The notes under the pieces were generated by a model. That model saw nothing but the letters and a program-made list of their open reading frames with translations. It did no database searches and was not told the origin of the DNA. Made by a program: the position numbers and the translations under genes. From IMG/VR virus record IMGVR_UViG_3300043449_002710, positions 124,001 through 188,000 of that record: a DNA stretch of 64,000 nt. The stretch is one strand, 5' to 3'. Shown piece after piece: positions 17,097-35,693 of this stretch (position 1 is the stretch's first letter; every line of letters starts with the position of its first letter).

Positions 17097-17907
17097 GGAT
17101 GATCCTCGTTTTAGTGACCAAAGGTTTGTCCTCTGGACCTTTGACGTGCTCGACGTGCCAAGTTCTGCCTTGTTCACAGTAATTGCCATCACGGTCTTTG
17201 CCGATCCGGCTGGTATCGAGAATCGTTTTTTCTTTATCGAGCCAAAAGTGGTGCCAAGCACCCCGGACCCACCACCTGTGACCCCACTCGATGATCTTTC
17301 CGGTTTCGCTGTTGTGTTCGGTCACCTGACTCTTTGGTCTGACATGGATCACTTTTCTAATCGTGATGAATCGTTTTGACTTGCCCGAGCCCACCTTGAT
17401 CTTTTCTCGGACATTCTCTGTCCCAAAGCGATCGGTGTTGGAGTTCATTCGATCCACAAGTGATTTCACCACGCCATCCAAATTGGTGATTAAGATGACC
17501 CCGTCTGATTCCTGAAGCCCTCGCTTTACTTTCGTCAGAGCAAAATAAAACCAACCTTGCTTGGGTTGTTCAAAAGCCAAGATGCAATCGATATCGACCG
17601 CAATCGGATCGTCAGGTCGGGAAACCGTCACGTATGTTTGACCGGGAAACTCAGCACTCCAGACCTTGAAAGGCGCGTCGTATTTCTCCTCGCTCATCAC
17701 TTCTGGCAATTCCTGCGGCCCGGTCTGCTTGGAAGGGGCGAACACGAAAGGCTGAGCGTGCTCAACCATGTGATAAAAGAACTCGGGGTCGTAGTTCTTG
17801 TTCTCTATCGGCGAATAGATGTACCCGGTTTTTTTGACGACCTCGATCATCTTTAAAAGCTTACGCATTCTTTTTCTCCGCCTTCCCAGAAGCAGACTTT
17901 TTGACAA
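17086..17907 (-). CDS. Phage hypothetical protein
   Basis: HRWWVRGAWHHFW...HVKGP motif; start probably MRKLLK. Confidence 0.6.
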   Translation of the reverse strand: MSKSLLLGRRRKRMRKLLKMIEVVKKTGYIYSPIENKNYDPEFFYHMVEHAQPFVFAPSKQTGPQELPEVMSEEKYDAPFKVWSAEFPGQTYVTVSRPDDPIAVDIDCILAFEQPKQGWFYFALTKVKRGLQESDGVILITNLDGVVKSLVDRMNSNTDRFGTENVREKIKVGSGKSKRFITIRKVIHVRPKSQVTEHNSETGKIIEWGHRWWVRGAWHHFWLDKEKTILDTSRIGKDRDGNYCEQGRTWHVEHVKGPEDKPLVTKTRIIHGK

Positions 17908-19270
17908 TCTCTTTCAGAGTTTGGATTTCTCCAAGCGAGTTGACGACCGCGATGTCATCCGAAAAAGCTTCCAAGGTTTTGCCTTCGCTTCCTAAGCCGC
18001 CTGCTCGATCGTTGATCGCAACCCCAAAGACTCTGACATCGGTTTCTTCCTTGAGGTTCAGGATCTCCTTGAGCTTGTGATCTTCAAACCGATATTCGTC
18101 GTCGGTGATAAAGATGATGTCAGCAGGTTTGAGTTCAGCGTCTTTTTTGCGCATCTCGAAAGCCGCTTTCAAAGGCCTATAGAAATCCGTACCGCCATCT
18201 GGGCCGAGTTGTGCGATCTGAATCTTGTCTTCCAAAGAGATCGAAACCGAGCGTGGAAAAAACCTCTGGAATTTGACTTCGGTATTAAACGCGATGAAGC
18301 CGAAAGCCCGCTTTTGTTTTGCGGCCAAAGTCATGAGAGATAAGGTGACGGCCTTAGCCCATTCGTCACGGCTACCTGCCATCGAGCCCGAGTGATCCAT
18401 CACGATAATGATCGGGCCACGCCCTAGCTGCTCAACACCTTTGAGGTTATAGACCTGAAGATTGCCCTCGATCATGTCTTTGTAGAAGAGCTTTGGGGTC
18501 CGTTTGAGTTTCATGAGTTCAGTCGGGACCAATCGTTCCAGGTCTGATCCCGGGCCAATGTCCACAATCTCGTCACTCCCATGCTGGTAAACCATGGCGT
18601 TAGCCGCATTGACCACGTTTTTGAAGCGACCGGCTAGATCCGCGATCCGCTTGCACTTGCCGGATTTCAGGATTTGATCGGCAAGCTCCAGCCGCTTTTC
18701 AAACGGCACCTGCTTCAATTCCTCAGGGTTGACCCCCCAAGACCGCATCGCGGTGTCCCATTCGTCTTGTGCTTCTTGAGCCTGATCCACGCCTTTACGA
18801 AGCGCATTTCTGAGATTACTCATCTCTTCTTCACTGAGCACGTCTTCTAAAATGACCTCGCCATTTTCGCCCGAGCCTTCACCGGGTTCGGGGATCTCAC
18901 CTTCTTCTTCTGCCTCGTCGATCTTTTTCTGAATATCTTGAAGTTGCTCAAGAACTTTTGGGGCCAAAGCGAGCGTACCAAAGGCCGAAGAGATCTCATC
19001 GAGCTGAGCCATCTTATGCGCTTGAGCGTACTCGGGCAGACGATGGAGCTGCTCGACCAAACCTCGTTGTGCGAGCGGGGCTTCCTCTTTAAGCTGCGGA
19101 GAGACTTTGTAGAGGGATTGAAAAACATCTTGAACCATAGCCTCGGTCTCGGGCTGGCCGGGCTGGATCAGTTCCCCCACTTTGGAGTGCTTAATCTCAT
19201 TAAATCCCAAGCGATCAATCGCATCGGTTTTGACAGCATTCAGGTTCGGTTTGGTTTCTTTCTTGCTCAT
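17861..19270 (-). CDS. VWA-domain protein (ViaA-like partner of MoxR ATPase)
   Basis: MIDAS DHSGSM, GGTDF, IIFITD. Confidence 0.9.
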   Translation of the reverse strand: MSKKETKPNLNAVKTDAIDRLGFNEIKHSKVGELIQPGQPETEAMVQDVFQSLYKVSPQLKEEAPLAQRGLVEQLHRLPEYAQAHKMAQLDEISSAFGTLALAPKVLEQLQDIQKKIDEAEEEGEIPEPGEGSGENGEVILEDVLSEEEMSNLRNALRKGVDQAQEAQDEWDTAMRSWGVNPEELKQVPFEKRLELADQILKSGKCKRIADLAGRFKNVVNAANAMVYQHGSDEIVDIGPGSDLERLVPTELMKLKRTPKLFYKDMIEGNLQVYNLKGVEQLGRGPIIIVMDHSGSMAGSRDEWAKAVTLSLMTLAAKQKRAFGFIAFNTEVKFQRFFPRSVSISLEDKIQIAQLGPDGGTDFYRPLKAAFEMRKKDAELKPADIIFITDDEYRFEDHKLKEILNLKEETDVRVFGVAINDRAGGLGSEGKTLEAFSDDIAVVNSLGEIQTLKEIVKKSASGKAEKKNA

Positions 19271-19335
19271 AAGTCAATATTATCAATATAAATATAAATA
19301 TCAATGAAAAATAAATAAAAAATAATCTAATGGAA

Positions 19336-19536
19336 TCAATTGCTTGCGGGTCTTTTTTCCTTGAGCCAATTGTGAACCCAAGGCTCATCCCACTCCGAGT
19401 CTGCTTCTGGACCGTAAACAATGGTGTGGGTTGCTTCTTGATAAAGGTCATGCGAGTATCTCACGTTGTTCACTTCGCAAAACTCGTGAACTAATTCCTT
19501 GGTGAGCATCTCCAGTTTTTGTTTCATGTAACTCAT
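19336..19536 (-). CDS. Small hypothetical protein
   Basis: ORF in operon position. Confidence 0.45.
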   Translation of the reverse strand: MSYMKQKLEMLTKELVHEFCEVNNVRYSHDLYQEATHTIVYGPEADSEWDEPWVHNWLKEKRPASN

Positions 19537-19539
19537 GAT

Positions 19540-20112
19540 TCACCCTTTGATGACTTTACTAATAGTCGGGTAATTTTTGAGGAGCGCTTGAATTTCAAGA
19601 TTAGTTCTTCGGACTAAAGCCGCCGCAAAAACAAACGTGCCTTTTCCATTCCTGAGTTCAGAATAGTTCTCAGCAATTTGGTTGGGGAGCAAGCTTTTAC
19701 CGATCGAGATCATCTCCCCAGATCGGCTCAAAAGAAAAACCTCGCCGTTAGATTTCTCAGGCTTAAATACAGCCATCTCTTGCTTGTACTCTGCGAGTAA
19801 AGCCATTACGTCTTTTTTGAGGTTTTCTGATTTGCCTTTGGGCGCTGAAACAAAAAGGCTATCCTCTTCGACTTTCTTCTCTTCTGGAGTACCTTTGTTC
19901 TCGATGAAATACCCATCCAGCCAATGATAGCCATAGCCTTTAGCCCTGACATCCGCCGCGAGCGCGAGGTTTCTTCGGATGTTTTCTTCGAGATCGTACT
20001 CCCCCCTGAAAGCGGTGAGAATGGCAAACGAACGATCTTCATTCTTCCACATTTCCCACACCCGAGAGAGTGTGGATGCGACCAGCCGGGTTTGTTTTAA
20101 GTTCAAAGACAT
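19540..20112 (-). CDS. Phage protein with C-terminal YP tag
   Basis: AILTAFRGE..N..L..D..GY..G.F.E..EDS block; ends YPTISKVIKG*. Confidence 0.7.
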   Translation of the reverse strand: MSLNLKQTRLVASTLSRVWEMWKNEDRSFAILTAFRGEYDLEENIRRNLALAADVRAKGYGYHWLDGYFIENKGTPEEKKVEEDSLFVSAPKGKSENLKKDVMALLAEYKQEMAVFKPEKSNGEVFLLSRSGEMISIGKSLLPNQIAENYSELRNGKGTFVFAAALVRRTNLEIQALLKNYPTISKVIKG

Positions 20113-20127
20113 ATAGCCCTCTTTCTT

Positions 20128-21000
20128 TTAAGATAAATGCTTTTTGATCGATCCGCTCAGGCTCTCAAGTTCCTCTTTCAAAGACTGAGCAGTCTGAACA
20201 AACAGGTCTTCATACATTTCGACTTTTCCCTTCAATTTCTTGAATCGGCGCAGATGGCTTTCCACACCGCGCTCGGTCGTGGGCGGGGTCTTGTCGAGTT
20301 CGGCTTTCTGAGCTTCCAAAGCGCCTTTGACTTCATTGACCAGAGAGTTCCACATGGATTTCTTGGCTTGAGCGGTATCAATGATCGGAAGCGTTCCCAA
20401 ATAGAAACCATCGAACTTGGCAAAGAGCGCCTGGAGTTTTTGGAACTGATCCATTTTGGAGCTTGGGATGAAATAGATCCCGCCGTTGTCGCGCACTGAG
20501 ATTCCTTCGCAATCGCCTTTGACGTAGTCCAAGACCACCTTACGGAAGTTGTCGGTATTATAAACGCCCTTCTCGCGCTCATAGCCTTCGATGATAGCGT
20601 CCTTGTTATAGCCGTCCACTTTGATCATGCCCGTCTTCTTGTCGAAAATGATCTGAGTGTCAGTCTTGAAGTCCACAGCGCGGTTAGCCACATCGACTGA
20701 CTGAGCTACGATCACAAATACCGTGTAGTCCTTGTCTTCCAAGATATTGCGGTGGAAAGAATTGGTGCGGTTGTCGGTTTCCTTCTGGATAGCTCTGAGG
20801 AGCGCCGACTTGTGACGAACCTTGTCGGCATAGTCTTCGTCGATGCCCACTTCTTTCAGGATCGCGATGAATGCTTCAAGAGGCATTTTCATCTCGTTGG
20901 CAGACCAGTACACGCAATTCCCGAGCAGCGGGTAGCCTTCAGCGGACTTGGCTAGGGTTTCACGATTGATGGTTTGGTTGGTTTTCTTGCTCATGTTCAT
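20128..21000 (-). CDS. DUF6744-like protein of the AAA/VWA module
   Basis: LLGNCVYW, VRDNGGIYFIP, C-terminal coiled coil; between AAA and VWA genes. Confidence 0.6.
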   Translation of the reverse strand: MNMSKKTNQTINRETLAKSAEGYPLLGNCVYWSANEMKMPLEAFIAILKEVGIDEDYADKVRHKSALLRAIQKETDNRTNSFHRNILEDKDYTVFVIVAQSVDVANRAVDFKTDTQIIFDKKTGMIKVDGYNKDAIIEGYEREKGVYNTDNFRKVVLDYVKGDCEGISVRDNGGIYFIPSSKMDQFQKLQALFAKFDGFYLGTLPIIDTAQAKKSMWNSLVNEVKGALEAQKAELDKTPPTTERGVESHLRRFKKLKGKVEMYEDLFVQTAQSLKEELESLSGSIKKHLS

Positions 21001-21021
21001 TTCTCCTTTATTTTTTTTTGG

Positions 21022-22134
21022 TTAGATCAGGCCTAGTTCTTCAGCCATGAACTTCTTATTCAGAGCTTCCATTTGAGAGATCGCCTGATCGAGTTTCGAG
21101 TTACTGACGCCGGGCTGTCTGAAGGACCGAAGCTTCTCTAAGCCCTTTTTGATCTTCTTGTGGGCTTCGATGTCTTCGATCTCTTTAGAGCGATAGCTGT
21201 TGATCACGTCACGGATACCATCGGTGATATCCATGATTTCCTGCCCGAGCGGGTTGGCGTACTTGGCAACAACTTGGCGGACCTTTTTGATCTCGTCAGT
21301 TTCGCGCCATAAGACATTTTCTAAGATCTCCAAGTCATCGGGTTGAACTTCAGAGTGTCCGTTCAAGTAAGCTTGAGCCTGAAGGACGGCGATGATCTGA
21401 GCCCACTTACGATCGGAGACGACTTGGCCTTGGCCACGAACTTCATTCCAGAGTTTGATGATGAGATCGATCGTGTCATCAGAGATCCCAACCTGAGAGA
21501 CTGCGTCTTGCTCAGCTTTGAGTTCTGACAGGCTCAGAGTAGGGAGAGCAGCAGGCTTAGAGGCTTGGATCTTGGATTTGAGGAGAGCCTTACGCGAAGC
21601 ATCGTCTTGAAGTTCAGAGACAAGGTATCTGAGCACAAAGCGGTCGTACATGGGAGCAAGCTCTTCAGAGTCAGGCAATTCGTTAGAAGCGCCGAACATT
21701 ACTTGAAGCGGGATCTGCTCGGGCTCAGAACCGTTGAAGAAGGTGCGCTCGTTCATGATCGGAAGCAGCGTGTTGAGTATCGAGGAAGAACCCTTAAAAA
21801 TTTCGTCCACGAATGCGATATCGGCTTTAGGGAGCTTGCCGGTAGTGACCCGAACATGCTGATCGGATTCCATGGCCTTGAACGAAACAGGCCCGAATAA
21901 TTCTTCTGGGGTGGTGAATTTCGAAACCTGCCAAGCGAAGTAGTTTCCGCCCAAGGCTTTGCACAAAGCATTGCACAGGGCCGATTTGCCAACACCCGGA
22001 GGGCCTAACATGAAAAGCATTTGGCGTGAGAGCAGGGCAACGAGCATCCCGTTGATGACCGAAGCACGCTCATAGAAGCTTTGGTTCAAGTGAGCTTGGA
22101 TATTTTGGATCTTCAGTTTACCTGACATAATCAA
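21022..22134 (-). CDS. MoxR/RavA-type AAA+ ATPase
   Basis: GPPGVGKS, TTPEELFGP, FVDEIFK, GASNELP, YDRF. Confidence 0.93.
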   Translation of the reverse strand: MIMSGKLKIQNIQAHLNQSFYERASVINGMLVALLSRQMLFMLGPPGVGKSALCNALCKALGGNYFAWQVSKFTTPEELFGPVSFKAMESDQHVRVTTGKLPKADIAFVDEIFKGSSSILNTLLPIMNERTFFNGSEPEQIPLQVMFGASNELPDSEELAPMYDRFVLRYLVSELQDDASRKALLKSKIQASKPAALPTLSLSELKAEQDAVSQVGISDDTIDLIIKLWNEVRGQGQVVSDRKWAQIIAVLQAQAYLNGHSEVQPDDLEILENVLWRETDEIKKVRQVVAKYANPLGQEIMDITDGIRDVINSYRSKEIEDIEAHKKIKKGLEKLRSFRQPGVSNSKLDQAISQMEALNKKFMAEELGLI

Positions 22135-23646: not shown

Positions 23647-23719
23647 CCCTTTAAAAATAACCTTCTCAGTTCAATGCTTCGATGTCTTGGTTTCCGTAAA
23701 ATTGGTAAAATTTAAGAGA

Positions 23720-25018
23720 ATGAAAAAGAACCCGACAGTAGAATTCCCAATAGCGCGAGCGATCCGAGAGCAGATTTTTAAGATTCCGCTTCTGCCTCAA
23801 GACCAGATCGTCGCTAGGTTCCAAGAACTGGATAGCGTACTGTACCCCCACGCTCTGAAATTGACAGAAAAATTTCCGCGTCTTCGGGACTATTTTCAAG
23901 AAGTCATGTTCCGAATCGCCTCGGGCAATACCCTGGGTAAAAATTACTACGACAAAGAAGACCATGAAGATGAAAAAGGGAAAAAATCCTCCAAGAAAAT
24001 CTTCAAGAACTCCGAGAAAAGAGTCCTAGCAAAGAGCTTTGCTTTATTTCGGTTGAAAAATCAACCCCAACGCTTCTGCTCTGTAGTGAAAGAAGCGGGG
24101 TTTCTCAGAGGCGTCTTTGAAGAAGCTATCGAGTTATTTTTGGAAATCACTCAAGGCTATACTGAGACCTTGGATGCGATGAGAAAAGCCGCCTTGGCTC
24201 ATTCCCCCGATTTCATCGAACTCGAAAGAAAAGTGCATTTCATAGAAAATGAGTTAGGGTTCTACAATTCTGACGAACTGGTTTTTCAGGTGGTGGAAAC
24301 AAATTCCGTTTGGAAGCAATACTCCAAACTCAGGGATAATCTGATCGCCCCCTATTTCCGAATGGTTTACACGATTGCTAAGAGCACTTCGACCTCCGAA
24401 GCGCAGACCCTAGACAATTTCCAAAACGGAATCTTTGGCTTGGTTCGGGCTGTCAAATGCTATACCCCCACCCGATTTGCCGCTTTTTCAGTTGTCGCAA
24501 AGACCTGGATCAAGCAATCCATCTTGCTCAACTTGAAAACCGAGGTCAATCTCATCAAGCTGCCTGTCGCGAATTGGCACCTCTATCAGAAGCTAGAAAA
24601 AATCCGACAGAAAATAGAAACAAAGATGCAACGAGACGCCACACTAGAGCAGATCTCGAAGGCTTCGAAAATCCCGTTAGAAAAAGTTCAAAAGATTTAC
24701 GAGAACGCCAAGCTCGTTCACGTCTTATCTCTTAATACCCCTAGTCAAACGGAAGACGAAAAATCCAATCAAGCCAAATGGAATTTGGAATCGATCCAAG
24801 CCAATGACACTCATCGAGAGCGGTTTGAGATTCAAAACGAATACGAATTGATTGAGCATGTGATTCATCTCTTTGATGAAGAAGAGCAGATCATCTTTGG
24901 CTTAATCTCAGGATGTTCGGATCTCATCCCAGAACCCGAGTTACCCCAGGAACTCATCCTAAAAGAATCCTTAAGGCAAAAAGCGGCCCGCAGGGGGCTC
25001 AGCGTTATTTTTAAATGA
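23720..25018 (+). CDS. RpoD-like phage sigma factor with degenerate region 4
   Basis: RMVYTIAK..DNFQNGIFGLVRAVKCY..FSVVAKTWIKQSI (region 2); IKLP..ATLEQIS..LSLNTP (region 3); no recognisable region-4.2 HTH. Confidence 0.82.
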   Translation: MKKNPTVEFPIARAIREQIFKIPLLPQDQIVARFQELDSVLYPHALKLTEKFPRLRDYFQEVMFRIASGNTLGKNYYDKEDHEDEKGKKSSKKIFKNSEKRVLAKSFALFRLKNQPQRFCSVVKEAGFLRGVFEEAIELFLEITQGYTETLDAMRKAALAHSPDFIELERKVHFIENELGFYNSDELVFQVVETNSVWKQYSKLRDNLIAPYFRMVYTIAKSTSTSEAQTLDNFQNGIFGLVRAVKCYTPTRFAAFSVVAKTWIKQSILLNLKTEVNLIKLPVANWHLYQKLEKIRQKIETKMQRDATLEQISKASKIPLEKVQKIYENAKLVHVLSLNTPSQTEDEKSNQAKWNLESIQANDTHRERFEIQNEYELIEHVIHLFDEEEQIIFGLISGCSDLIPEPELPQELILKESLRQKAARRGLSVIFK

Positions 25019-25709: not shown

Positions 25710-25934
25710 ATGTTTCCCACCAACTATGAAAATTTTTGGGACCTTTTAAAAGACGCGGATTTCGCACGTGGGTTTTTGACCCAATGCTACCATGAAGGGT
25801 TTTCTATCCACGGAATTAGGCATCCAGATGAAATTGAAGACATGCCTTGTACCTTGGTTGTGGAGCTTTCTAGGCAGATCTTGCCGTTTTACTACATGGA
25901 AAAAACCCCAAGCCCCAATTACTGGTTTCATTGA
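25710..25934 (+). CDS. Small hypothetical protein
   Basis: Coupled to flanking genes. Confidence 0.5.
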   Translation: MFPTNYENFWDLLKDADFARGFLTQCYHEGFSIHGIRHPDEIEDMPCTLVVELSRQILPFYYMEKTPSPNYWFH

Positions 25935-28900
25935 TGCGAAAGTCTAAAAAGTTTTTGAACCCAGAAGACCTACTGAGTCAGATCATCAGCAGTGATTTTG
26001 ATCTGTCTCAGTTTGACCAAATCGATGAAAGCCATATCCCACAGCCACCCAATTTCATCGATTGGATCACAGGCAGGGATTTCTGTAACGCAACCCTCCT
26101 ACCTTGGCAGGTTGAAGCCGGGATGCACCTGTTCTCAGATTACTGCCCAGAGTGTTCGAACCCAGAATACATCACCGAGCTATTTGATGAATCGATGGCT
26201 GAGATCCTCGATAACATCCAGTTCTTAGATCAAGGAGTTTGCCCCAAGTGCAAAAAGAATCGATTAGATCTTTTCACCTTGGGTGAAAAGCATCCGACAA
26301 AGCCATCGATTAAATCCGAGTTTATTGGAAATTTGGGCCAGAGAAGCGGAAAGACACTGGCCGAACACACCGAAGTTTTAACCCCCCAGGGGCCTGTTGC
26401 CATCAAAGATATCCAAATTGGGGATATCGTTTATGGCTGGAATCGAGACGGTTCTGTTTCTGAAACAAAAGTAGTCAATAAATTTGATCACGGTATTAAG
26501 CCTGTTCGAGACCTGATTTCTAGGGGTAGGGTACTGGCTTCTTGCACCGACGAGCACCGTTGGCTTACGTGCAGAACCAGTCGTTATGGAAAAGGAACTA
26601 GAAAACAAAGAAAATCAGATTTTTTAGAGTTAAAACTCAAAGACTTCAAGGATAACAAAGATATCGCGATTCATCGTAAATTGATCAAGATTCCTTGTGG
26701 GGAAGTTTCGGAACCCCATGCTTATGCGATTGCGGCCCTTCTTGGAGATGGGTGCTCCCGTCAAGGCACCTCAAATACGATAGATATTTCTTCAGGGGAT
26801 CAAAATGTCCCTAAAAAAGTAGCGTCTGTACTCGGAGCACAAACAATTAAACGAAACTGGGAAGATAACTATACTTGGCATATTCGCGCAGGAGATACTT
26901 ATAGCAGGGAAACATTGAACTGCCACTATTACGCGGAATGGTGCAAGGGTAAATATGCCCACGAAAAGATATGCGATCTTGAGACAATAAAAACTTGGGA
27001 TCGTGAAAGTTGCCTAGAATTCCTCGCCGGACTGATCGACACGGATGGTTCCGTACATGGAACTGGGAGACTAATTGTTGCTTTTGGTTGCCAATCCAGG
27101 TCAGTCGTAGAAGCATTCGCCTATTTGGTTTACCGCCTTTTTCAATACAAGCCAGCAATCCACATGGATAACAGACCGAAATACTTCAATGGTCCAATAT
27201 ATCAGGCAAAGGTAAACTCTACTTTTTTTGCTAAAAGAATTTTGAAAGAGATTGATCCTTATTTGGCGAGCCCAAATAGAAAATGGAAACCCGAATACGA
27301 AATGATTGGGAATCATAACTCCCATTCAGATTATACGAAACCCCAAGCTGGTGAACCCTACCTCTGTCAGACTTATGATATTGAAGTAGGGAATGAAACC
27401 AATCTTTATGTTTTGGCCCACGAAGGTCTTATAACGCACAATTCAAAAATGGTCGCGTTGTCCACAAGCTATCAGCTCAATCGCTGGTTGAGTCTTCACG
27501 ACCCGCTAGGCTTTTATGGGCTACCTCGGATGGAAGTGATCTTGGGGACTTTTTCCGCGCTCTCCGCAGAGCAAGCTGAAGAAAACCTCTGGATGCCATT
27601 CAAGGGATTAATCGACGCATCGCCTTGGTTTAAAAAGTACAATGATTTCCTCAAGTCGGAGGAGAAGCGTCTCTCCATTCCGCTTTGTGACGTGAAAGAC
27701 ACCTATATGTTCTATCCGCACAAAAGACTTCTGATCTCTTTCACAGGATCGGATGACCGGAAAAAACGCGGTCGGACTCGATTGTTTGGTGCGATTGACG
27801 AAATCGCTTTCTTGAATTCGGAAGTCGGGACTTCCAAAAAGAAGGTGATGGATGCGGATAAAAACTACGCCGCTCTCAACAACTCTCTTTCCACCATCCG
27901 GCAAAAGGCATTGATGCGATTGGCAGAGGGGCATTTCAATACGATCATGCCCATCATGTATAACGCCTCCTCGCCTTATAACGTCCAAGACAAAATCATG
28001 CGGTTGACCAAATCAGCCCCAGACAATCCCTTTGCGGTAGTGATTCACCGAGCTACTTGGGAGTCGAATCCAGACTACTCAGAAAAAACCTGTCGCGCCA
28101 TCAACCCAGGCCTTTCTCAAGTCGAGTTCGAGCGCGACTTTGGTGCAATCCCCCCGTTTTCGGATTCCCCCTATATTGGGGATGCTCGGGTGATGGAAAA
28201 GCTCTGCGCCCACAAAGATCACTATCGACCTCTTTTGAATGTGACTCGCGAAGTCCATGTCGATATGCTTGGAGACAAATATCTCTTTTTAAGAGCCAAG
28301 GCGCATCAGCTCGATAAGAATACGCCAAGGCTTTTGGCACTCGACAACGGGTACAATCAGAATGCGTTTGGTGCGGCGATCTTTGGCTATGATTCGATTC
28401 AAAAAAAGCCTGTGCTTCAGTTTTTAGTGAGCCTCTACCCAGATCCTCAATCCAATCTCTCGATTCATTTCCCATCGATGTTCGAGAATTTTATTTTGCC
28501 GATTATCCAAGGCCTCAATATTAAGCACGTCTTTTATGACCGCTGGCAGTCCCTTGATCAGATCCAGCGGTTAAGAGATATGAAAATCAACGCCGAAGCG
28601 CATTCGCTTTCTTTTGAGAAAGACATGCTGCCTTTCAAGCAGCAGCTTTTGTCTGGGAACATGGTGCTACCACCACTAGAGATCGCATCCATGCAAGAAG
28701 TCAAAGATGCGGTCAACCCCACGCAGATGACAACAGATAAACCGGTGGCCAATTTGATCTGGCAAACGCTGACTGTGAGACAGGTCGGTAAAAAAGTCTT
28801 AAAGCCTTTGGACGGGGATGACGATCTATTCCGAGCTTTTGTACTCGGGGGATCTCGCTTTTTGTCAGACGAGATCCAAAGAATTTATGCAACTTATGCT

Positions 28901-29035
28901 GGAATCAAACAAGCGGCTCAAAACGCCCAAGGCTTTTTAGGAAGCTTTCATTCTCGAAGCGGGGGAGGCAGTAGTGCAACCCCCAATCGAGGCAATCAGA
29001 TTTCTATCGCCAAGTATCGTGGCTTTTCCAAATAA
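25931..29035 (+). CDS. terL: Large terminase subunit with intein
   Basis: LLPWQ, Walker A GQRSGK/S split by intein, RGRT..AIDE Walker B, ASSP, RNase H-like LALD...YDRWQS...DDLFRA. Confidence 0.9.
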   Translation: MMRKSKKFLNPEDLLSQIISSDFDLSQFDQIDESHIPQPPNFIDWITGRDFCNATLLPWQVEAGMHLFSDYCPECSNPEYITELFDESMAEILDNIQFLDQGVCPKCKKNRLDLFTLGEKHPTKPSIKSEFIGNLGQRSGKTLAEHTEVLTPQGPVAIKDIQIGDIVYGWNRDGSVSETKVVNKFDHGIKPVRDLISRGRVLASCTDEHRWLTCRTSRYGKGTRKQRKSDFLELKLKDFKDNKDIAIHRKLIKIPCGEVSEPHAYAIAALLGDGCSRQGTSNTIDISSGDQNVPKKVASVLGAQTIKRNWEDNYTWHIRAGDTYSRETLNCHYYAEWCKGKYAHEKICDLETIKTWDRESCLEFLAGLIDTDGSVHGTGRLIVAFGCQSRSVVEAFAYLVYRLFQYKPAIHMDNRPKYFNGPIYQAKVNSTFFAKRILKEIDPYLASPNRKWKPEYEMIGNHNSHSDYTKPQAGEPYLCQTYDIEVGNETNLYVLAHEGLITHNSKMVALSTSYQLNRWLSLHDPLGFYGLPRMEVILGTFSALSAEQAEENLWMPFKGLIDASPWFKKYNDFLKSEEKRLSIPLCDVKDTYMFYPHKRLLISFTGSDDRKKRGRTRLFGAIDEIAFLNSEVGTSKKKVMDADKNYAALNNSLSTIRQKALMRLAEGHFNTIMPIMYNASSPYNVQDKIMRLTKSAPDNPFAVVIHRATWESNPDYSEKTCRAINPGLSQVEFERDFGAIPPFSDSPYIGDARVMEKLCAHKDHYRPLLNVTREVHVDMLGDKYLFLRAKAHQLDKNTPRLLALDNGYNQNAFGAAIFGYDSIQKKPVLQFLVSLYPDPQSNLSIHFPSMFENFILPIIQGLNIKHVFYDRWQSLDQIQRLRDMKINAEAHSLSFEKDMLPFKQQLLSGNMVLPPLEIASMQEVKDAVNPTQMTTDKPVANLIWQTLTVRQVGKKVLKPLDGDDDLFRAFVLGGSRFLSDEIQRIYATYAGIKQAAQNAQGFLGSFHSRSGGGSSATPNRGNQISIAKYRGFSK
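26354..27442 (+). mobile_element. Intein (363 aa) with LAGLIDADG homing endonuclease, Thr at position 1
   Basis: TLAEHTEVLT (block A), CTDEHRW (B), ALLGDG and LAGLIDTDG, TYDIEV (F), ITHN/S (G). Confidence 0.92.
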
Positions 29036-29054: not shown

Positions 29055-30122
29055 ATGAAACTATTTTACAGTCTTTTGCTTCTATTCGTGTCTGTTCAAA
29101 GCTTAGCGGATGTTCGGTTTGTGAAAGTGTCCAATCAAGGCAAAGCTCTTCCAGATGATGCTTCAGAATGGAGCTGCGTCTATGATCGAAAAAATAAACT
29201 GATGTGGGAAGTAAAGACCAACGACAAGGGCCTGCGCGATGCTATCTGGACTTACACTTGGTATGACTCCACTCAGTCAAAAGAAAAACAGGGAACCAAA
29301 GTCGATCTAAAATCCAGAACTCAATGTTTTAACCCAGGCAACTGCAACACCGAGTATTATGTCAATGCGGTGAATAAAGCCGGTCTTTGCGGTTTCAACG
29401 ACTGGCAGCTTCCTTCTCAAACCAACACCATCCGTGATGGCTCCCACCAGGGGGCTTTAGATAGCCTGATCAATTGCCCGGGTGGGTATAGCGACAACTG
29501 GGTTTATTACTACTATTGCCTCGACGCTCAGAAATATAAACCGAATCTTCTCGATCAGAGGTTCTTTATCAACCTCGATCGGGCCACTCGTGAAAATGTA
29601 GGATATCAGTATTTCAGTCCCTACTACTGGTCCCGCCATGTTTATGATGGGAACGATAAATATACTTGGTGGGTCAACATTGAGACAGGTGGACTCACTC
29701 AAGGGGATCAGAGTTTAGCCAACCATGTTCTTCTGTCCCGCAATGCTCCGAATTTCAATGACACGATTCCCCCCACTCCCCCTGCTCCACCCACAACACG
29801 ACGAGCTTGTGTGATCCCGGCAGACACTACTGCGCTTTGTAAAGAGAACGGAATTTCCACTTTCACTTTAGCGAACGCCTCGGTCAATAACGGGGCTGTT
29901 TGCGAGAGTTACTCGACTGGCAACTTGGCCATCGCTGGAAAATCTTTTCAATGCGCTGATGGAAACTGGAATATGGTCGGCAGCAATTCCTACTGTGAAG
30001 TCACTAAAAACAATTACTACAATGGCTACTGCACTTCAAAATATGTAACCAACGGATTTTCTTGTTTTGAAAATAAAGAAGTCTATCGCTGTGTGGGCAA
30101 CAAATGGGTCTTGCTGAAATGA
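29055..30122 (+). CDS. Secreted DUF1566 (Lcl C-terminal-like) protein with Cys-rich tail
   Basis: Signal peptide; CVYDRKNKLMWEVK, LCGFNDWQLPS, YWS; Pro linker then Cys-rich domain. Confidence 0.75.
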   Translation: MKLFYSLLLLFVSVQSLADVRFVKVSNQGKALPDDASEWSCVYDRKNKLMWEVKTNDKGLRDAIWTYTWYDSTQSKEKQGTKVDLKSRTQCFNPGNCNTEYYVNAVNKAGLCGFNDWQLPSQTNTIRDGSHQGALDSLINCPGGYSDNWVYYYYCLDAQKYKPNLLDQRFFINLDRATRENVGYQYFSPYYWSRHVYDGNDKYTWWVNIETGGLTQGDQSLANHVLLSRNAPNFNDTIPPTPPAPPTTRRACVIPADTTALCKENGISTFTLANASVNNGAVCESYSTGNLAIAGKSFQCADGNWNMVGSNSYCEVTKNNYYNGYCTSKYVTNGFSCFENKEVYRCVGNKWVLLK

Positions 30123-30123
30123 G

Positions 30124-30212
30124 TGGTGCCGAGGATCGGAGTCGAACCGATACGTCCCTTGCGAAACTCAGGATTTTAAATCCTGTGCGTCTACCAATTT
30201 CGCCACCCCGGC
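30124..30212 (-). tRNA. tRNA-Leu (anticodon TAA), CCA encoded
   Basis: GCCGGGG acceptor, TGGTAGA D loop, CAGGA-TTTAAAA-TCCTG anticodon arm, long variable arm, GTTCGA, ACCA. Confidence 0.95.
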
Positions 30213-31287: not shown

Positions 31288-33543
31288 ATGTTTAAGTTTG
31301 GAAAATACGCGACTCCTAAGGGTCCTTATCAAAAATATCAAGACCCCTTGAGTTATGTCTCTAGCTCGGTAGCGAACAAAGGCTCTGTTGCAACCGCCAG
31401 CAAAAAGACACGCATTCAATCGAACTACACACCTACCCTTAGCGGAACTGATCCCAACAGTTCTTTCACCTCGGGTGGGGCGAATATTGGTGGGGGCAAC
31501 GGCGGATACAACTCGGATCGCTACAATCCGGTCTTTGATAATCTTGAGGAAGGAACAATCCTAGAGGATTGGATACCGAGAGACGCAGCCGGGCTAGATC
31601 TCTTATACCGCCGCATCTATTTGCGTGACCCAACGCTCGGCCCTGGGATTGATATCATCCGAAATTTGCCTTGGTCTGATTTCACTTTAGAAGGGATCGA
31701 GGACAACGAAATAAAAAAGATTTACGAAGAATGTATGTCTTCGCTCAATCCCATGCTTCTCATGCCTGATATCACGCATGAGTTTTTGGTTTTGGGTCGG
31801 TCCATCTCCTCTCTTATCTTTGACCATAAGCGTGGCATCTTTTCAGGCGTGGTTCCCCATGACCCAGACTTCGTGAGAATCACTCCGGTTCCAGTTTATG
31901 GATTTGACCCGATGTGCGATTTCACCTTGTCGCCTGGGTTTAAAAAGTTTCTTCAGAGCCAAGACCCTAGAGCCGTCGATGCTCGAAAGTCTTTGCCCCC
32001 CTCGTTCTTGGAAGCAGCCGCCAATCAACAAGGGTTCTTGCCGCTCGATCCGATCTCCACGATCTACCTTTCACGGAAAGCCGCGCCAAACGATTCGATT
32101 GGAACCAGCATCCTGACCCGCACTCTTTATTTTTGGGCGATTGAAAAAGCGCTGTTGAACGCCCAGCTTTCGTCCACTCGAAGACGAGCCCGCTCCTTCA
32201 TTCATTTGAAAGCCGGGATCGACAATATGTGGGAGCCTTCCCCAGAGGAGATCGACGCCCTTGCAGGCATTGTGATTCAAGCCAATGAAGATCCTGTGGG
32301 CGGAGTCATTGCCACCCGTACCGGAGTTGAGATCAGTGAGCCTGTGAGTGGTGGAGCGGATTTTTATAAATGGAGCGATGAGCTGGAACTTTTCGCAAAA
32401 TACAAAATGCAGTGTATCGGGATCTCCGATGCACTTTTAAGTGGAGACGCAACCTACGCAAATGCGGATCAAGCTCGATCTGTTTTTGTGGAAAATTTAG
32501 CTTCTCTCCGCTCTAGGATTGTGAACAAGTTTTTCATGCAAAAGCTTTTTCCTGTCGTGGCACGAGTCCATGGATTTGTAAAAAGAACGCCTGCTGAATT
32601 GAGTCATCGGATTCGAACTACTTCTGCCTTTGACGGCCCTCGGTTCCCAAGCTGGGCTCAAACGACGATGATCACATCTGAAAAACTCACTCAGCGCAAG
32701 GTCATGAGCTTACCGATCGAAAACTTAATGATCCCTACGATCAACTGGGCTAAGCAGCTTAAGCCCACCCAAGATGAAAAGGCTTTAGAAATTTTGGAGC
32801 GGCTCAAACAAAACGAGTACCCGGTGACTCTCAGCCAGTGGGCGAGCGCTGCGGGCTTAAACCCTAAAACAATCGAGCAAGAGCAAAAAGACAATCTCGA
32901 TCTTCAGAATCGAATTCAAAAGCTTCAAGAAGCCATGGCCCCGCAAGAGGCCGAGACTAGCGACTCGGGTGAAGATTTGGGAATGGATATTCCAGAAGCT
33001 TCCGACGAACAGCCTGCAGGCGAAGAGGCTCCCGCTGAAGAACCTGTCCAGCAATCGGTTTACGCTAAGGCTAAAAGAATTGCCAAAGGCGGACCTGTTG
33101 CAAGAATTGATCAAATCGCGATTTGGAACCATGGTAAATGCGGTGGATTGAGTAAAAAAGACGCTCAAAAAGTGACCAGTTCTTTATTGAAGGATTCCAA
33201 TCCTGGGATCTTTAAAGACCCAAGGGCCTTGTTGAATAAGCTTCAAGACAAAGTGGGTTCTGAGCGGGCTCCGATCCTAGCTTATGTACTGAATCGGTTG
33301 GGGTTGACTTCTTTCATGATTGATTCGAAATCGGCTCAAGTCATTGCCAAGTCGGCAAGAGATAATCTGAACCGGTATTCGTCTTTTTCTAGTGAGAAAG
33401 CTATGCTCGATGTCAGGCGTTACGAGACAGAGATTCAGGCTCTTTCTCGATACGCAGAAAAAATGCGTTTGAATCAGAGTCAGTTCAAGGCAAAATTGGC
33501 ACCGCCCCCGAGCATTGATTCTAAAGTTATGGGTGGCTATTAA
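31288..33543 (+). CDS. Portal protein
   Basis: YRRIY.RDP..G..IDI...LPWSDF, EFLVLG, IGISDALLSGDATYAN pattern; near terL. Confidence 0.78.
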   Translation: MFKFGKYATPKGPYQKYQDPLSYVSSSVANKGSVATASKKTRIQSNYTPTLSGTDPNSSFTSGGANIGGGNGGYNSDRYNPVFDNLEEGTILEDWIPRDAAGLDLLYRRIYLRDPTLGPGIDIIRNLPWSDFTLEGIEDNEIKKIYEECMSSLNPMLLMPDITHEFLVLGRSISSLIFDHKRGIFSGVVPHDPDFVRITPVPVYGFDPMCDFTLSPGFKKFLQSQDPRAVDARKSLPPSFLEAAANQQGFLPLDPISTIYLSRKAAPNDSIGTSILTRTLYFWAIEKALLNAQLSSTRRRARSFIHLKAGIDNMWEPSPEEIDALAGIVIQANEDPVGGVIATRTGVEISEPVSGGADFYKWSDELELFAKYKMQCIGISDALLSGDATYANADQARSVFVENLASLRSRIVNKFFMQKLFPVVARVHGFVKRTPAELSHRIRTTSAFDGPRFPSWAQTTMITSEKLTQRKVMSLPIENLMIPTINWAKQLKPTQDEKALEILERLKQNEYPVTLSQWASAAGLNPKTIEQEQKDNLDLQNRIQKLQEAMAPQEAETSDSGEDLGMDIPEASDEQPAGEEAPAEEPVQQSVYAKAKRIAKGGPVARIDQIAIWNHGKCGGLSKKDAQKVTSSLLKDSNPGIFKDPRALLNKLQDKVGSERAPILAYVLNRLGLTSFMIDSKSAQVIAKSARDNLNRYSSFSSEKAMLDVRRYETEIQALSRYAEKMRLNQSQFKAKLAPPPSIDSKVMGGY

Positions 33544-34691: not shown

Positions 34692-35693
34692 TCAATTTTT
34701 TTGGATAAAATATTGAAGATCTTGAATCACTTCCAAGGGGCAATCACCTGGGTCCATTTTAGCATCAGAATCGGTTGGATCTGATAGATATCGAGTGAGA
34801 TTGGCGTCTTGAACTTCAAATCCAAACTCTTTGAATGCAGCAGCATAACGAGGCGTCTCTTCCCTGCCTGGGTTATCCGCATCTAACGCCAAGATGACTC
34901 GCGTGCAGCCTTTGGAGAGAATCTGAAGAATCTTTTGTTTTGTAAGTTGGCCCAAACCTAAAACAGCAATAGCTGGGAGCCCAAAAGACCTAAAACGCAA
35001 ACAATCGAAAGGGCCTTCAACAATGATCACCCAGCGCGGGTTTTTTTCGTAATTAAGACAGTACCAATGTTTCTGAGCTGGAAAGCCTTCTGAATTGAGA
35101 TACTTGTATTTGTTCGGGATATCACTATTTTCGCCACGGGCTGCGACATGGCCAACCAGCTTTTGACTCAAATCGTGCAGAGGAAACCAAAGCCGGTATT
35201 CTTCGGCCATCCGGTCCCAGTAGGCCTCGCAGCCGACCGATTGCAAAAATGAAGCTGTCAGCCCACGCCAAGACTCTTGCCAAGGCCCTTCTGTAATAGG
35301 TTTTTTGTAGGCGTTGTTTTGTTGAACTTTGTCTAAAGCTTTCAGATCCGTTTTGAGCTGAAGGAAAAGATTGTCGGGCTGGTTTTCGTGCTTCTTTTGC
35401 TCCCAAAGGTCTAGGCTAAGCTTGGAGGCAAGCTTGTTCCAGCCACCATGCTCTAGGCAGCTCCAGCACCGAAACCCACCTACTGAAACCCTCCCGGGAA
35501 TGTTTTGAAGCGCAATCCCAAGAGATGGGTTGTGGTCGTCATGAAAAGGACAAAGAATCTTGGCCTCAGTGGGTTTGGACAAATCCACTGCGGGTAAACG
35601 AGCAAGTTGTTGTCGAATAAAGCTGACTTTATCCATCGGATAATACAGATGTCCTTGTGAGGCAGCCATCCCATGAAAGACAGGCTTGCGCAA
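34692..35693 (-). CDS. DNA primase (CHC2 zinc finger plus TOPRIM)
   Basis: CPFHDDHNPS..CWSC; KYLNS; IVEGPFD; LDADNPG; DPGD. Confidence 0.9.
   Translation of the reverse strand: MRKPVFHGMAASQGHLYYPMDKVSFIRQQLARLPAVDLSKPTEAKILCPFHDDHNPSLGIALQNIPGRVSVGGFRCWSCLEHGGWNKLASKLSLDLWEQKKHENQPDNLFLQLKTDLKALDKVQQNNAYKKPITEGPWQESWRGLTASFLQSVGCEAYWDRMAEEYRLWFPLHDLSQKLVGHVAARGENSDIPNKYKYLNSEGFPAQKHWYCLNYEKNPRWVIIVEGPFDCLRFRSFGLPAIAVLGLGQLTKQKILQILSKGCTRVILALDADNPGREETPRYAAAFKEFGFEVQDANLTRYLSDPTDSDAKMDPGDCPLEVIQDLQYFIQKN

What the first reader, a model, noticed from the sequence alone, without database searches (positions are those of the whole stretch)
26354..27445. Terminase intein begins with threonine and fits no standard class
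Seen: Walker A GQRSGK is followed by ACA (Thr) LAEHTEVLT; the intein ends ITHN with Ser+1, restoring GKS. It has class-3-like Trp (TDEHRW) and Thr (THN) but Asp, not Cys, at block F4 (LCQTYDIEV; a Cys lies four residues earlier). Known: class 1 uses Cys/Ser1, class 2 (KlbA) has Ala1 with Cys+1, class 3 needs the W-C-T triplet. Since TerL is essential, splicing should occur. Inference: Thr1 is the nucleophile, or an alternative route operates.
Basis: partly seen in the sequence, partly recalled or inferred. Interest (0 to 1): 0.65.

Follow-up and report, generated by a model that had tools for sequence, protein, structure and literature searches.

The report
Terminase intein that starts with threonine
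A jumbo phage's DNA-packaging enzyme carries a self-splicing intein that starts with threonine instead of the usual cysteine; this rare natural variant most likely splices by the ordinary route through oxygen esters.

Summary
ORF 25934..29035 (+) is the only large terminase (TerL) of a 223-kb virus record. A 363-residue intein with a LAGLIDADG endonuclease (26354..27442) sits between Lys and Ser of Walker A. It starts with Thr (ACA), ends THN, and is followed by Ser. Intein-less relatives read GQRSGK-SK straight across the site.

"Fits no standard class" does not hold. Published definitions of class 1 allow Cys, Ser or Thr at position 1. Trp (B12), Asp (F4) and Thr (G5) are the norm in this intein family, whose members nearly all start with Cys.

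Position 1 in 158 relatives is Cys 150, Thr 7 (the window included) and Ser 1, and nothing else. Thr arose at least five times. Thr codons (ACT, ACA) need two or three base changes from Cys (TGY). The single Ser is AGT, the one-step bridge between them. Two Thr1 relatives were recovered in independent assemblies. The upstream Cys does not track with Thr1.

Best reading: Thr1 is the nucleophile in a normal four-step splice. Splicing is inferred, not shown, and I could not check reads for the window's codon. A 2010 paper says Thr1 had never been seen in natural inteins, and I found no later report.

The parts
25934..29035 (+). Large terminase (TerL) precursor gene, 1033 codons from the ATG plus stop. 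The ATG shares one base with the stop of the upstream small ORF.
   Evidence: ORF; phrog_17415 terminase large subunit, E 3e-115; about 31% identity to TerL of jumbo phages PaBG, Y3 and the SNUABM group; the only TerL in the 223-kb record.
25934..26353 (+). N-extein, ending in the Walker A segment GQRSGK (26336-26353).
   Evidence: aligns with GQRSGK of PaBG TerL.
26354..26356 (+). Intein residue 1, Thr (ACA), in the place of the usual Cys1.
   Evidence: it aligns with Cys1 of 150 relatives; codons.
26354..27442 (+). Intein of 363 residues: a HINT splicing domain interrupted by a LAGLIDADG homing endonuclease.
   Evidence: LAGLIDADG_3. (gp41-1 and RecA inteins). (287 relatives). (AlphaFold2 pLDDT 91.2). 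(PI-SceI, TliVMA, PI-PfuI).
26546..26563 (+). Block B, TDEHRW: Thr B7, His B10, Trp B12.
   Evidence: family: B7 Thr 112/117, B10 His 116/117, B12 Trp 96/117.
26720..26758 (+). First LAGLIDADG motif (…ALLGDGCS), acidic residue kept.
27014..27052 (+). Second LAGLIDADG motif (…AGLIDTDGS), acidic residue kept.
27365..27367 (+). Cys338, four residues before F4. It does not track with Thr1.
   Evidence: present in Cys1 relative P0004, absent in Thr1 members P0009, P0014, P0017 and P0031.
27371..27388 (+). Block F, TYDIEV, with Asp at F4 (27377-27379).
   Evidence: Asp in 117 of 117 family members.
27431..27442 (+). Block G, ITHN: Thr G5, His G6, terminal Asn G7.
27443..27445 (+). Ser+1 (TCA), first C-extein residue. 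It is the Walker A Ser after splicing.
   Evidence: intein-less alleles read GK|SK.
27443..29035 (+). C-extein: the rest of the TerL ATPase and the nuclease domain.

Best explanation
This is a class 1 intein with a LAGLIDADG homing endonuclease, inserted in the Walker A loop of a jumbo phage's only large terminase. Thr1 has replaced the ancestral Cys1 as the N-terminal nucleophile.

Proposed steps, all inferred:
1. The Thr1 hydroxyl attacks the Lys(-1) carbonyl (N-to-O acyl shift) and gives a linear oxyester. Block B Thr65 and His68 and block F Asp342 assist.
2. Ser+1 attacks that ester and forms the branched intermediate.
3. Asn363 cyclises, helped by His362, and releases the intein.
4. An O-to-N shift makes the peptide bond and restores GQRSGK-SK, an intact Walker A.

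Shown here: the anatomy, the insertion site, the fold, conservation of the catalytic set, and the recurrence of Thr1 in relatives. Not shown: that the protein splices.
For: - Boundaries and product: the intein-less PaBG TerL and four intein-less alleles read GQRSGKS(K) across the site.
- Every class 1 catalytic residue is present, and each is near-invariant in the family.
- The AlphaFold2 model is confident (pLDDT 91.2) and matches PI-SceI, TliVMA and PI-PfuI.
- Position 1 in 158 family members is Cys 150, Thr 7 and Ser 1, and never a non-nucleophile.
- Thr1 needs at least 5 origins on the 117-row tree. P0134 adds one more, separate from P0031 (AU p = 0.0002).
- Codons: Cys is TGT or TGC. Thr is ACT in P0009 and P0017 and ACA in the window and P0031. 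That is 2-3 changes, and the shortest paths pass through Ser. The only Ser1, in P0015, is AGT, the bridge between TGT and ACT.
- P0009 is identical in two sequencing runs. P0017 appears in two assemblies with 1 difference in 2853 nt. Thr1 in relatives is therefore not an assembly slip.
- Both LAGLIDADG motifs are intact. In pairwise comparisons pN (0.15-0.50) lies below a near-saturated or saturated pS (0.64-0.93) in every intein segment.
- The record holds only one TerL.
Against: - There is no biochemical evidence of splicing.
- The window's own codon could not be checked in reads, and its protein cluster has a single member.
- Thr1 members are scattered single tips, not a deep clade. That pattern also fits short-lived, mildly harmful variants.
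- P0006 is the nearest TerL relative and also has Thr1. It has lost block B His10 (now Gln) and part of its endonuclease, so at least one Thr1 intein looks degenerate.
- Cys1-to-Ser changes usually inactivate Cys1 inteins, and Ser1 inteins normally carry an extra [KR]-His 'NX' motif (PMC10189870). I see no such dipeptide before block B here.
- The record is a metagenomic virus contig estimated 81% complete. Its viability is unknown.
Confidence: 0.68

Rival explanations
1. The Thr1 intein splices poorly or not at all. The contig would then be a defective or complemented phage variant, or an intein on its way to decay, and TerL would be inactive or made only slowly.
For: - Thr1 members are isolated tips.
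- P0006 combines Thr1 with loss of block B His10 and a damaged endonuclease.
- Cys1-to-Ser swaps usually kill Cys1 inteins, and the NX His motif of Ser1 inteins is absent (PMC10189870).
- The record is 81% complete and has no end repeats.
Against: - Random loss of Cys1 should give Arg, Gly, Tyr, Phe, Trp or a stop, all one step from TGY. Only Thr and Ser are seen, 8 of 8.
- Reaching ACN takes 2-3 ordered changes, and this happened at least five times.
- All other catalytic residues and both endonuclease motifs are intact in the window.
- The 1033-codon frame is open, and there is no second TerL to complement it.
Confidence: 0.2
2. Splicing goes by a non-class-1 route. Either an internal Cys (Cys338, or Cys64 next to block B) attacks the N-terminal junction as in class 3, or Ser+1 attacks it directly as in class 2. 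Thr1 would be a bystander.
For: - The family has the class 3 Trp (B12) and Thr (G5).
- It is related to class 3 inteins that sit at the same GK| site of terminases in IMG/VR contigs.
- A Cys lies four residues before F4.
Against: - F4 is Asp in 117 of 117 members. The class 3 nucleophile must be Cys at F4 (PMC2807308).
- Cys338 is shared with Cys1 relative P0004 and missing in P0009, P0014, P0017 and P0031. Cys64 is Ser in P0017 and P0015.
- If residue 1 did not matter, non-nucleophiles should appear there as they do in the class 3 relatives (Ala, Leu, Glu, Gln, Gly, Lys, Phe). None does in 158 members.
- Class 2 inteins use Ala1 with Cys+1.
Confidence: 0.06
3. The ACA codon is a sequencing or assembly error, and the real intein starts with Cys or Ser.
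For: The window's protein is a single-member cluster from one contig, and reads could not be examined.
Against: - ACA differs from TGT and TGC at all three positions and from TCA at one.
- Six other family members carry Thr1. Two of them were recovered in independent runs or assemblies.
- P0006, the closest TerL relative (83% extein identity, from another sample), also starts TLAE.
Confidence: 0.04

Closest known systems
gp41-1 intein (cyanophage-like, class 1; PDB 6qaz, 6riz)
   Same: It is the best sequence match among solved structures and also appears in the fold search. It ends THN with Ser+1 and has Asp at F4 (PMC12245125).
   Different: gp41-1 starts with Cys, is a small split intein without an endonuclease, and natively lacks the block B Trp. 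That Trp was engineered into the WCT variant (PMC7664689).
Class 3 inteins (mycobacteriophage Bethlehem DnaB prototype; phage terminase P-loop members)
   Same: They insert in an ATPase P-loop, carry Trp at B12 and Thr at G5, and have Ser or Thr at +1. IMG/VR relatives at the same GK| site are class 3 (PMC2807308).
   Different: Class 3 needs Cys at F4 and has a non-nucleophilic residue 1. Here F4 is Asp, invariant in the family, and residue 1 is a nucleophile.
[quoted passage not shown]
   Same: It shows that Thr at position 1 can support splicing (cited in PMC2807308).
   Different: It is an engineered change in an archaeal Ser1 intein, not a natural Thr1 in a Cys1 family.
Cysteine-independent Ser1/Ser+1 inteins (PolB16 OarG, Psp Pol-1, Mvu-M7 Pol-3)
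   Same: Both esters would be oxygen esters, and +1 is Ser.
   Different: Those inteins share an NX motif ([KR]-His) thought to activate Ser1 (PMC10189870). No [KR]-His lies before block B here, and the nearest relatives here use Cys1.
Arthrobacter sp. FB24 DnaB intein (Gly1, W-D-T triplet)
   Same: It has the same Trp-Asp-Thr triplet at B12, F4 and G5 (PMC2807308).
   Different: It starts with a non-nucleophile (Gly1), sits in a different host protein, and its mechanism is unresolved.
PI-SceI, TliVMA and PI-PfuI (intein plus LAGLIDADG endonuclease)
   Same: The overall two-domain architecture matches in the fold search (E 2.6e-15 to 1.7e-10).
   Different: Sequence identity is only 12-16%. 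All are Cys1 inteins in other host proteins.

Membership tests
Intein (HINT splicing domain with nested LAGLIDADG endonuclease) | Blocks A, B, F and G with their key residues, and two LAGLIDADG motifs | tested here: met
Intein (HINT splicing domain with nested LAGLIDADG endonuclease) | HINT plus endonuclease fold | tested here: met
   (pLDDT 91.2, pTM 0.90). (PI-SceI, TliVMA, PI-PfuI; probability 1.00).
Intein (HINT splicing domain with nested LAGLIDADG endonuclease) | In-frame insertion at a conserved host site, with intein-less alleles that are continuous across it | tested here: met
   (PaBG TerL). (L086, L087, L088, L090 read GQRSGK|SK).
Intein (HINT splicing domain with nested LAGLIDADG endonuclease) | Protein splicing: excision with ligation of the exteins | not testable with these tools
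   Needs expression and a gel or mass-spectrometry assay.
Class 1 intein | Cys, Ser or Thr at intein position 1 (definition in PMC5222942 and PMC4031507) | tested here: met
   Thr1, ACA at 26354-26356. It aligns with Cys1 of relatives.
Class 1 intein | Assisting residues Thr B7, His B10 and Asp F4; penultimate His; terminal Asn; a nucleophile at +1 | tested here: met
   T, H, D, H, N, S in the window.
Class 1 intein | A linear (thio)ester forms at residue 1 | not testable with these tools
   Needs T1A, T1C and T1S mutants and trapping of the ester.
Class 2 intein (KlbA type) | Ala1 with Cys+1 attacking the N-terminal junction directly | tested here: not met
   Thr1 and Ser+1.
Class 3 intein | Trp (B12) - Cys (F4) - Thr (G5) triplet, with Cys F4 as the obligate nucleophile | tested here: not met
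   Trp and Thr are present, but F4 is Asp here and in 117 of 117 relatives.
Class 3 intein | Non-nucleophilic residue at position 1 | tested here: not met
   Thr1 here. The class 3 relatives at the same site have Ala, Leu, Glu, Gln, Gly, Lys or Phe.
Ser1-type cysteine-independent inteins | NX motif: a His preceded by Arg or Lys, upstream of block B (PMC10189870) | tested here: inconclusive
   No [KR]-His dipeptide in residues 1-64. His46 (FDHG) is a candidate only: position 46 is His or Asn in 7 of 8 O-nucleophile members and Lys in P0134. I could not measure its position in the structure.
Large terminase of PaBG/Y3-like jumbo phages | TerL homology across both exteins, Walker A, a neighbouring portal gene | tested here: met
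   (portal at 31288-33543).

The most novel reading that the evidence does not exclude
These may be the first natural Thr1 inteins. The terminase P-loop intein family may tolerate Cys, Ser or Thr at position 1 without any other active-site change. Pairs such as the window's intein and its 70%-identical Cys1 relative P0004 would then be a ready natural experiment on what an oxygen nucleophile needs. They would also offer a scaffold for cysteine-free inteins of the fast THN type.
Probability: 0.45. Interest if true: 0.65.

Novelty: new variant of a known kind. Interest (0 to 1): 0.5.

Why it matters
Reviews list Thr as an allowed first residue of inteins. Tori et al. 2010 (PMC2807308) state that Thr1 had not been seen in any natural intein, and my searches of the open literature found no later report.

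Here Thr1 appears in 7 of 158 members of one phage intein family, from at least five separate origins, next to close Cys1 relatives. If these inteins splice, two points follow.

- The rarity of Thr1 is a matter of history or fitness, not of chemistry.
- One scaffold can run on sulphur or on oxygen. This runs against the experience that Cys1 inteins cannot be converted to hydroxyl nucleophiles (PMC10189870).

Inteins whose two splice-junction nucleophiles are hydroxyls are wanted for protein ligation under oxidising conditions. If these inteins do not splice, the finding is only a set of decaying inteins.

Tried and rejected
- **Reads.** I tried no other route.
- **Close relatives in IMG/VR with the whole protein.** No pattern matched.
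- **DNA of the two closest relatives.** None is held for P0004 or P0006, nor for P0014. A lineage-specific dN/dS for the window was therefore not possible.
- **Pairwise dN/dS with the more distant P0007, P0008 and P0009.** Synonymous sites are saturated or nearly so (pS 0.64-0.93). Only pN below pS can be stated.
- **Residues that co-vary with the oxygen nucleophile.** The best column is position 46: His in 3 of 7 against 2 of 110, uncorrected p = 0.0013. The eighth member, P0134, has Lys there, and the value does not survive correction for about 360 columns. I treat it as a lead only.
- **A shared Thr1 ancestor for the window and P0006.** Neither supported nor rejected (AU p = 0.085).
- **A shared ancestor for P0031 and P0134.** Rejected (AU p = 0.0002).
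- **Upstream Cys338 as a class-3-like nucleophile.** Rejected on its distribution.
- **A second TerL that could complement a dead one.** None in the record.
- **Literature.** Searches for a natural Thr1 intein found none.
- **Spliced model.** No joined extein sequence went to any search or fold tool. The exteins were searched apart, by reference. For the extein tree only, the two extein parts of each protein were placed end to end inside the local script as tree input.

Full report
**What is there**

The window is part of a 223,260-bp IMG/VR virus record, estimated 81% complete. ORF 25931/25934..29035 (+) matches terminase large subunit profiles (phrog_17415, E 3e-115). Its C-terminal 530 residues are about 31% identical to TerL of jumbo phages PaBG, vB_EamM_Y3 and the Erwinia SNUABM group.

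The neighbours fit a phage packaging and replication region:
- a sigma-70-like factor at 23687-25018
- a portal gene at 31288-33543
- a primase at 34692-35693
- a MoxR ATPase and a VWA protein

The record holds no second TerL.

**The observation**

GQRSGK (26336-26353) is followed by ACA, Thr (26354-26356). Block B reads TDEHRW and block F reads TYDIEV, with a Cys four residues before the Asp. The intein ends ITHN and Ser follows (27443-27445). The intein proper is 26354..27442, 363 residues.

It carries two intact LAGLIDADG motifs. An AlphaFold2 model built on a 40-sequence alignment is confident (pLDDT 91.2, pTM 0.90). Its best structural matches are PI-SceI, the TliVMA intein and PI-PfuI, which are inteins with nested LAGLIDADG endonucleases.

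The boundaries are fixed by intein-less relatives. PaBG TerL aligns as GQRSGKS across the gap. Four metagenomic alleles of the same TerL clade read GQRSGK|SK.

**The family**

A word-index search with residues 100-540 gave 287 relatives. A second search seeded with the Thr1 member P0031 added 42 more sequences. Nearly all are terminases with the intein in the P-loop, either at GK|S/T or three residues earlier at RR|SGK. A few sit in RecA-like or helicase proteins.

Across 117 aligned inteins:

| Position | Residues |
|---|---|
| B7 | Thr 112, Ser 5 |
| B10 | His 116, Gln 1 |
| B12 | Trp 96, Phe 18 |
| F4 | Asp 117 |
| G5 | Thr 104 |
| G7 | Asn 117 |
| +1 | Ser 87, Thr 24, Cys 6 |

So the class-3-like Trp and Thr are the family norm, and they occur together with Cys1 and Asp F4. 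The best sequence match among solved structures is gp41-1, a Cys1/Ser+1 class 1 intein that also ends THN (PMC12245125).

More distant IMG/VR relatives at the same GK| site are true class 3 inteins. They have Ala, Leu, Glu, Gln, Gly, Lys or Phe at position 1, Trp at B12, Cys at F4 where that column aligned, and Thr at G5. This family therefore looks like class 1 kin of the phage class 3 inteins.

**Position 1**

| Sample | Cys | Thr | Ser |
|---|---|---|---|
| First search, 118 proteins (with the P0114 boundary corrected) | 111 | 6 | 1 |
| Second search, 41 further proteins | 40 | 1 | 0 |

The Thr members are the window (P0003), P0006, P0009, P0014, P0017, P0031 and P0134. The Ser member is P0015. 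The 22 close family loci in IMG/VR all have Cys, as TGT or TGC. No non-nucleophile occurs at position 1 in this family.

On the 117-row intein tree, well-supported branches force at least five origins of Thr1. On smaller, carefully built trees they force four. P0134 is separate from P0031 (AU p = 0.0002).

The window and P0006 share 83% extein identity and form a supported clade with the Cys1 mini-intein allele P0057. A shared Thr1 ancestor for those two is neither shown nor excluded (AU p = 0.085).

**Codons**

Thr is ACT in P0009 and P0017 and ACA in the window and P0031. ACT is two changes from TGT. ACA is three changes from either Cys codon. The shortest paths run through Ser. The one Ser1 member uses AGT, the single-step bridge TGT to AGT to ACT.

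A random hit on TGY would give Arg, Gly, Tyr, Phe, Trp, Ser or a stop. Only hydroxyl residues are seen, 8 of 8. This is the strongest argument that position 1 stays under selection for a nucleophile.

P0009 is identical in two sequencing runs. P0017 occurs in a JGI assembly and an ENA assembly with one difference in 2853 nt. Thr1 in relatives is therefore not an assembly artefact.

**Class**

Class 1 is defined by an N-terminal Ser, Thr or Cys that forms the linear ester (PMC5222942; PMC4031507, Fig. 3). So "fits no standard class" is wrong.

Tori et al. [quoted passage not shown] They added that it can perform the same rearrangement and that the S1T mutant of the Tli pol-2 intein splices (PMC2807308). 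Six further literature searches found no report of a natural Thr1 intein. The library covers open-access papers only.

**Alternative routes**

- The class 3 route needs Cys at F4, and F4 is Asp throughout the family.
- Cys338 also occurs in Cys1 relative P0004 and is absent from four other Thr1 members. Cys64 is Ser in P0017 and P0015.
- Class 2 uses Ala1 with Cys+1.

**Cautions**

- Splicing is inferred from the anatomy, from the essential role of TerL and from the pattern at position 1.
- Thr1 members are single tips.
- P0006 has Thr1 together with Gln at B10, Phe at B12, a partly deleted endonuclease and Ala in place of the second LAGLIDADG Asp. It may be a decaying intein.
- Cys1-to-Ser changes usually inactivate Cys1 inteins, and Ser1 inteins carry a [KR]-His NX motif (PMC10189870) that I do not find here.
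- Position 46 (His in the window, P0006 and P0014) is weakly enriched among the O-nucleophile members, but P0134 has Lys there.
- Pairwise codon comparisons with P0007, P0008 and P0009 show pN 0.15-0.50 below pS 0.64-0.93 in every intein segment. Synonymous sites are saturated or nearly so, and the comparison is not specific to the Thr1 branch.

**Within-genome control**

The same virus record has two more inteins outside the window, one in a RecA-like ATPase and one in a family A DNA polymerase. Both have Cys1, HN and Ser+1. The phage as a whole does not avoid cysteine nucleophiles.

**Handling note**

No joined extein sequence went to any search or fold tool. The exteins were searched apart, by reference. 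The extein tree placed the two extein parts end to end inside a local script only.

**Verdict**

The intein is a rare natural Thr1 variant of an otherwise ordinary class 1 terminase P-loop intein. It most likely uses Thr1 as its nucleophile (confidence about 0.68). It is a new variant of a known kind, of moderate interest to intein biochemistry and engineering.

Noticed in passing
L099 (G000:C1:95408-98497) and L100 (G000:C1:41710-44937), same virus record, outside the window: The phage has two more inteins. One is in a RecA/UvsX-like ATPase (…AMFG|CLHGDTRI … VVVHN|SPIY). The other is in a family A DNA polymerase (…LADYG|CFTKGNKV … IRVHN|SMDAY). Both have Cys1 and Ser+1 and carry endonuclease-like inserts. 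That makes three inteins in one genome, and only the TerL one starts with Thr.
   Followed up: partly
P0006 (ENA ERZ1426817, 16.8-kb contig; no DNA held): The nearest TerL relative (83% extein identity) also has Thr1. Its intein has lost about 75 residues of the endonuclease, has Ala in place of the second LAGLIDADG Asp, and has Gln and Phe in place of block B His10 and Trp12. It is either a decaying intein or one that splices without the most conserved intein residue.
   Followed up: partly
P0008 (L097) and P0009 (L091, L092): The inteins of P0008 and P0009 are sisters (support 100/98) and are more alike (pN 0.15-0.27) than their exteins (pN 0.30-0.32). The extein tree separates the two hosts. 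This suggests lateral intein transfer between diverged phages. In L097 the gene that runs off the locus's end, after a small ORF downstream of TerL, also carries an intein.
   Followed up: partly
L024-L081 (IMG/VR contigs): Many terminases in IMG/VR carry class 3 inteins at the same GK| site, with Leu, Ala, Glu, Gln, Gly, Lys or Phe at position 1. This is wider than the Ala, Pro, Gly and Gln that I recall for class 3 inteins (from memory, not checked here).
   Followed up: no
P0019, P0024, P0026, P0029, P0034, P0044, P0054 and others: The same intein family uses a second insertion point three residues upstream in Walker A (RR|C…HN|SGK[ST]). A few of these end KN, EN, QN or SN instead of HN.
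   Followed up: no
P0031 and P0134, N-termini: Two Thr1 inteins that the tree places apart share the start TI-x-SSTYV. This is either convergence near the nucleophile or exchange of a short N-terminal piece.
   Followed up: no
window 26489-26491 (His46, FDHG): Position 46, just before an invariant Gly, is His or Asn in 7 of 8 O-nucleophile inteins, while Gln is the commonest residue in Cys1 members (56 of 110). It is a weak lead for a helper residue. It is not significant after correction.
   Followed up: partly
window 30124-30212 (-), 29055-30122 (+), 17861-22134 (-): A tRNA-Leu (anticodon TAA) lies directly after a gene for a signal-peptide protein with an Lcl C-terminal domain, placed between TerL and portal. 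A MoxR-type AAA ATPase and a VWA protein lie upstream.
   Followed up: no
window 25710-25936: A 74-codon ORF ends in TGA one base into the TerL ATG (TGATG overlap). The same arrangement of a small ORF overlapping the TerL start by one base is seen in relatives.
   Followed up: no
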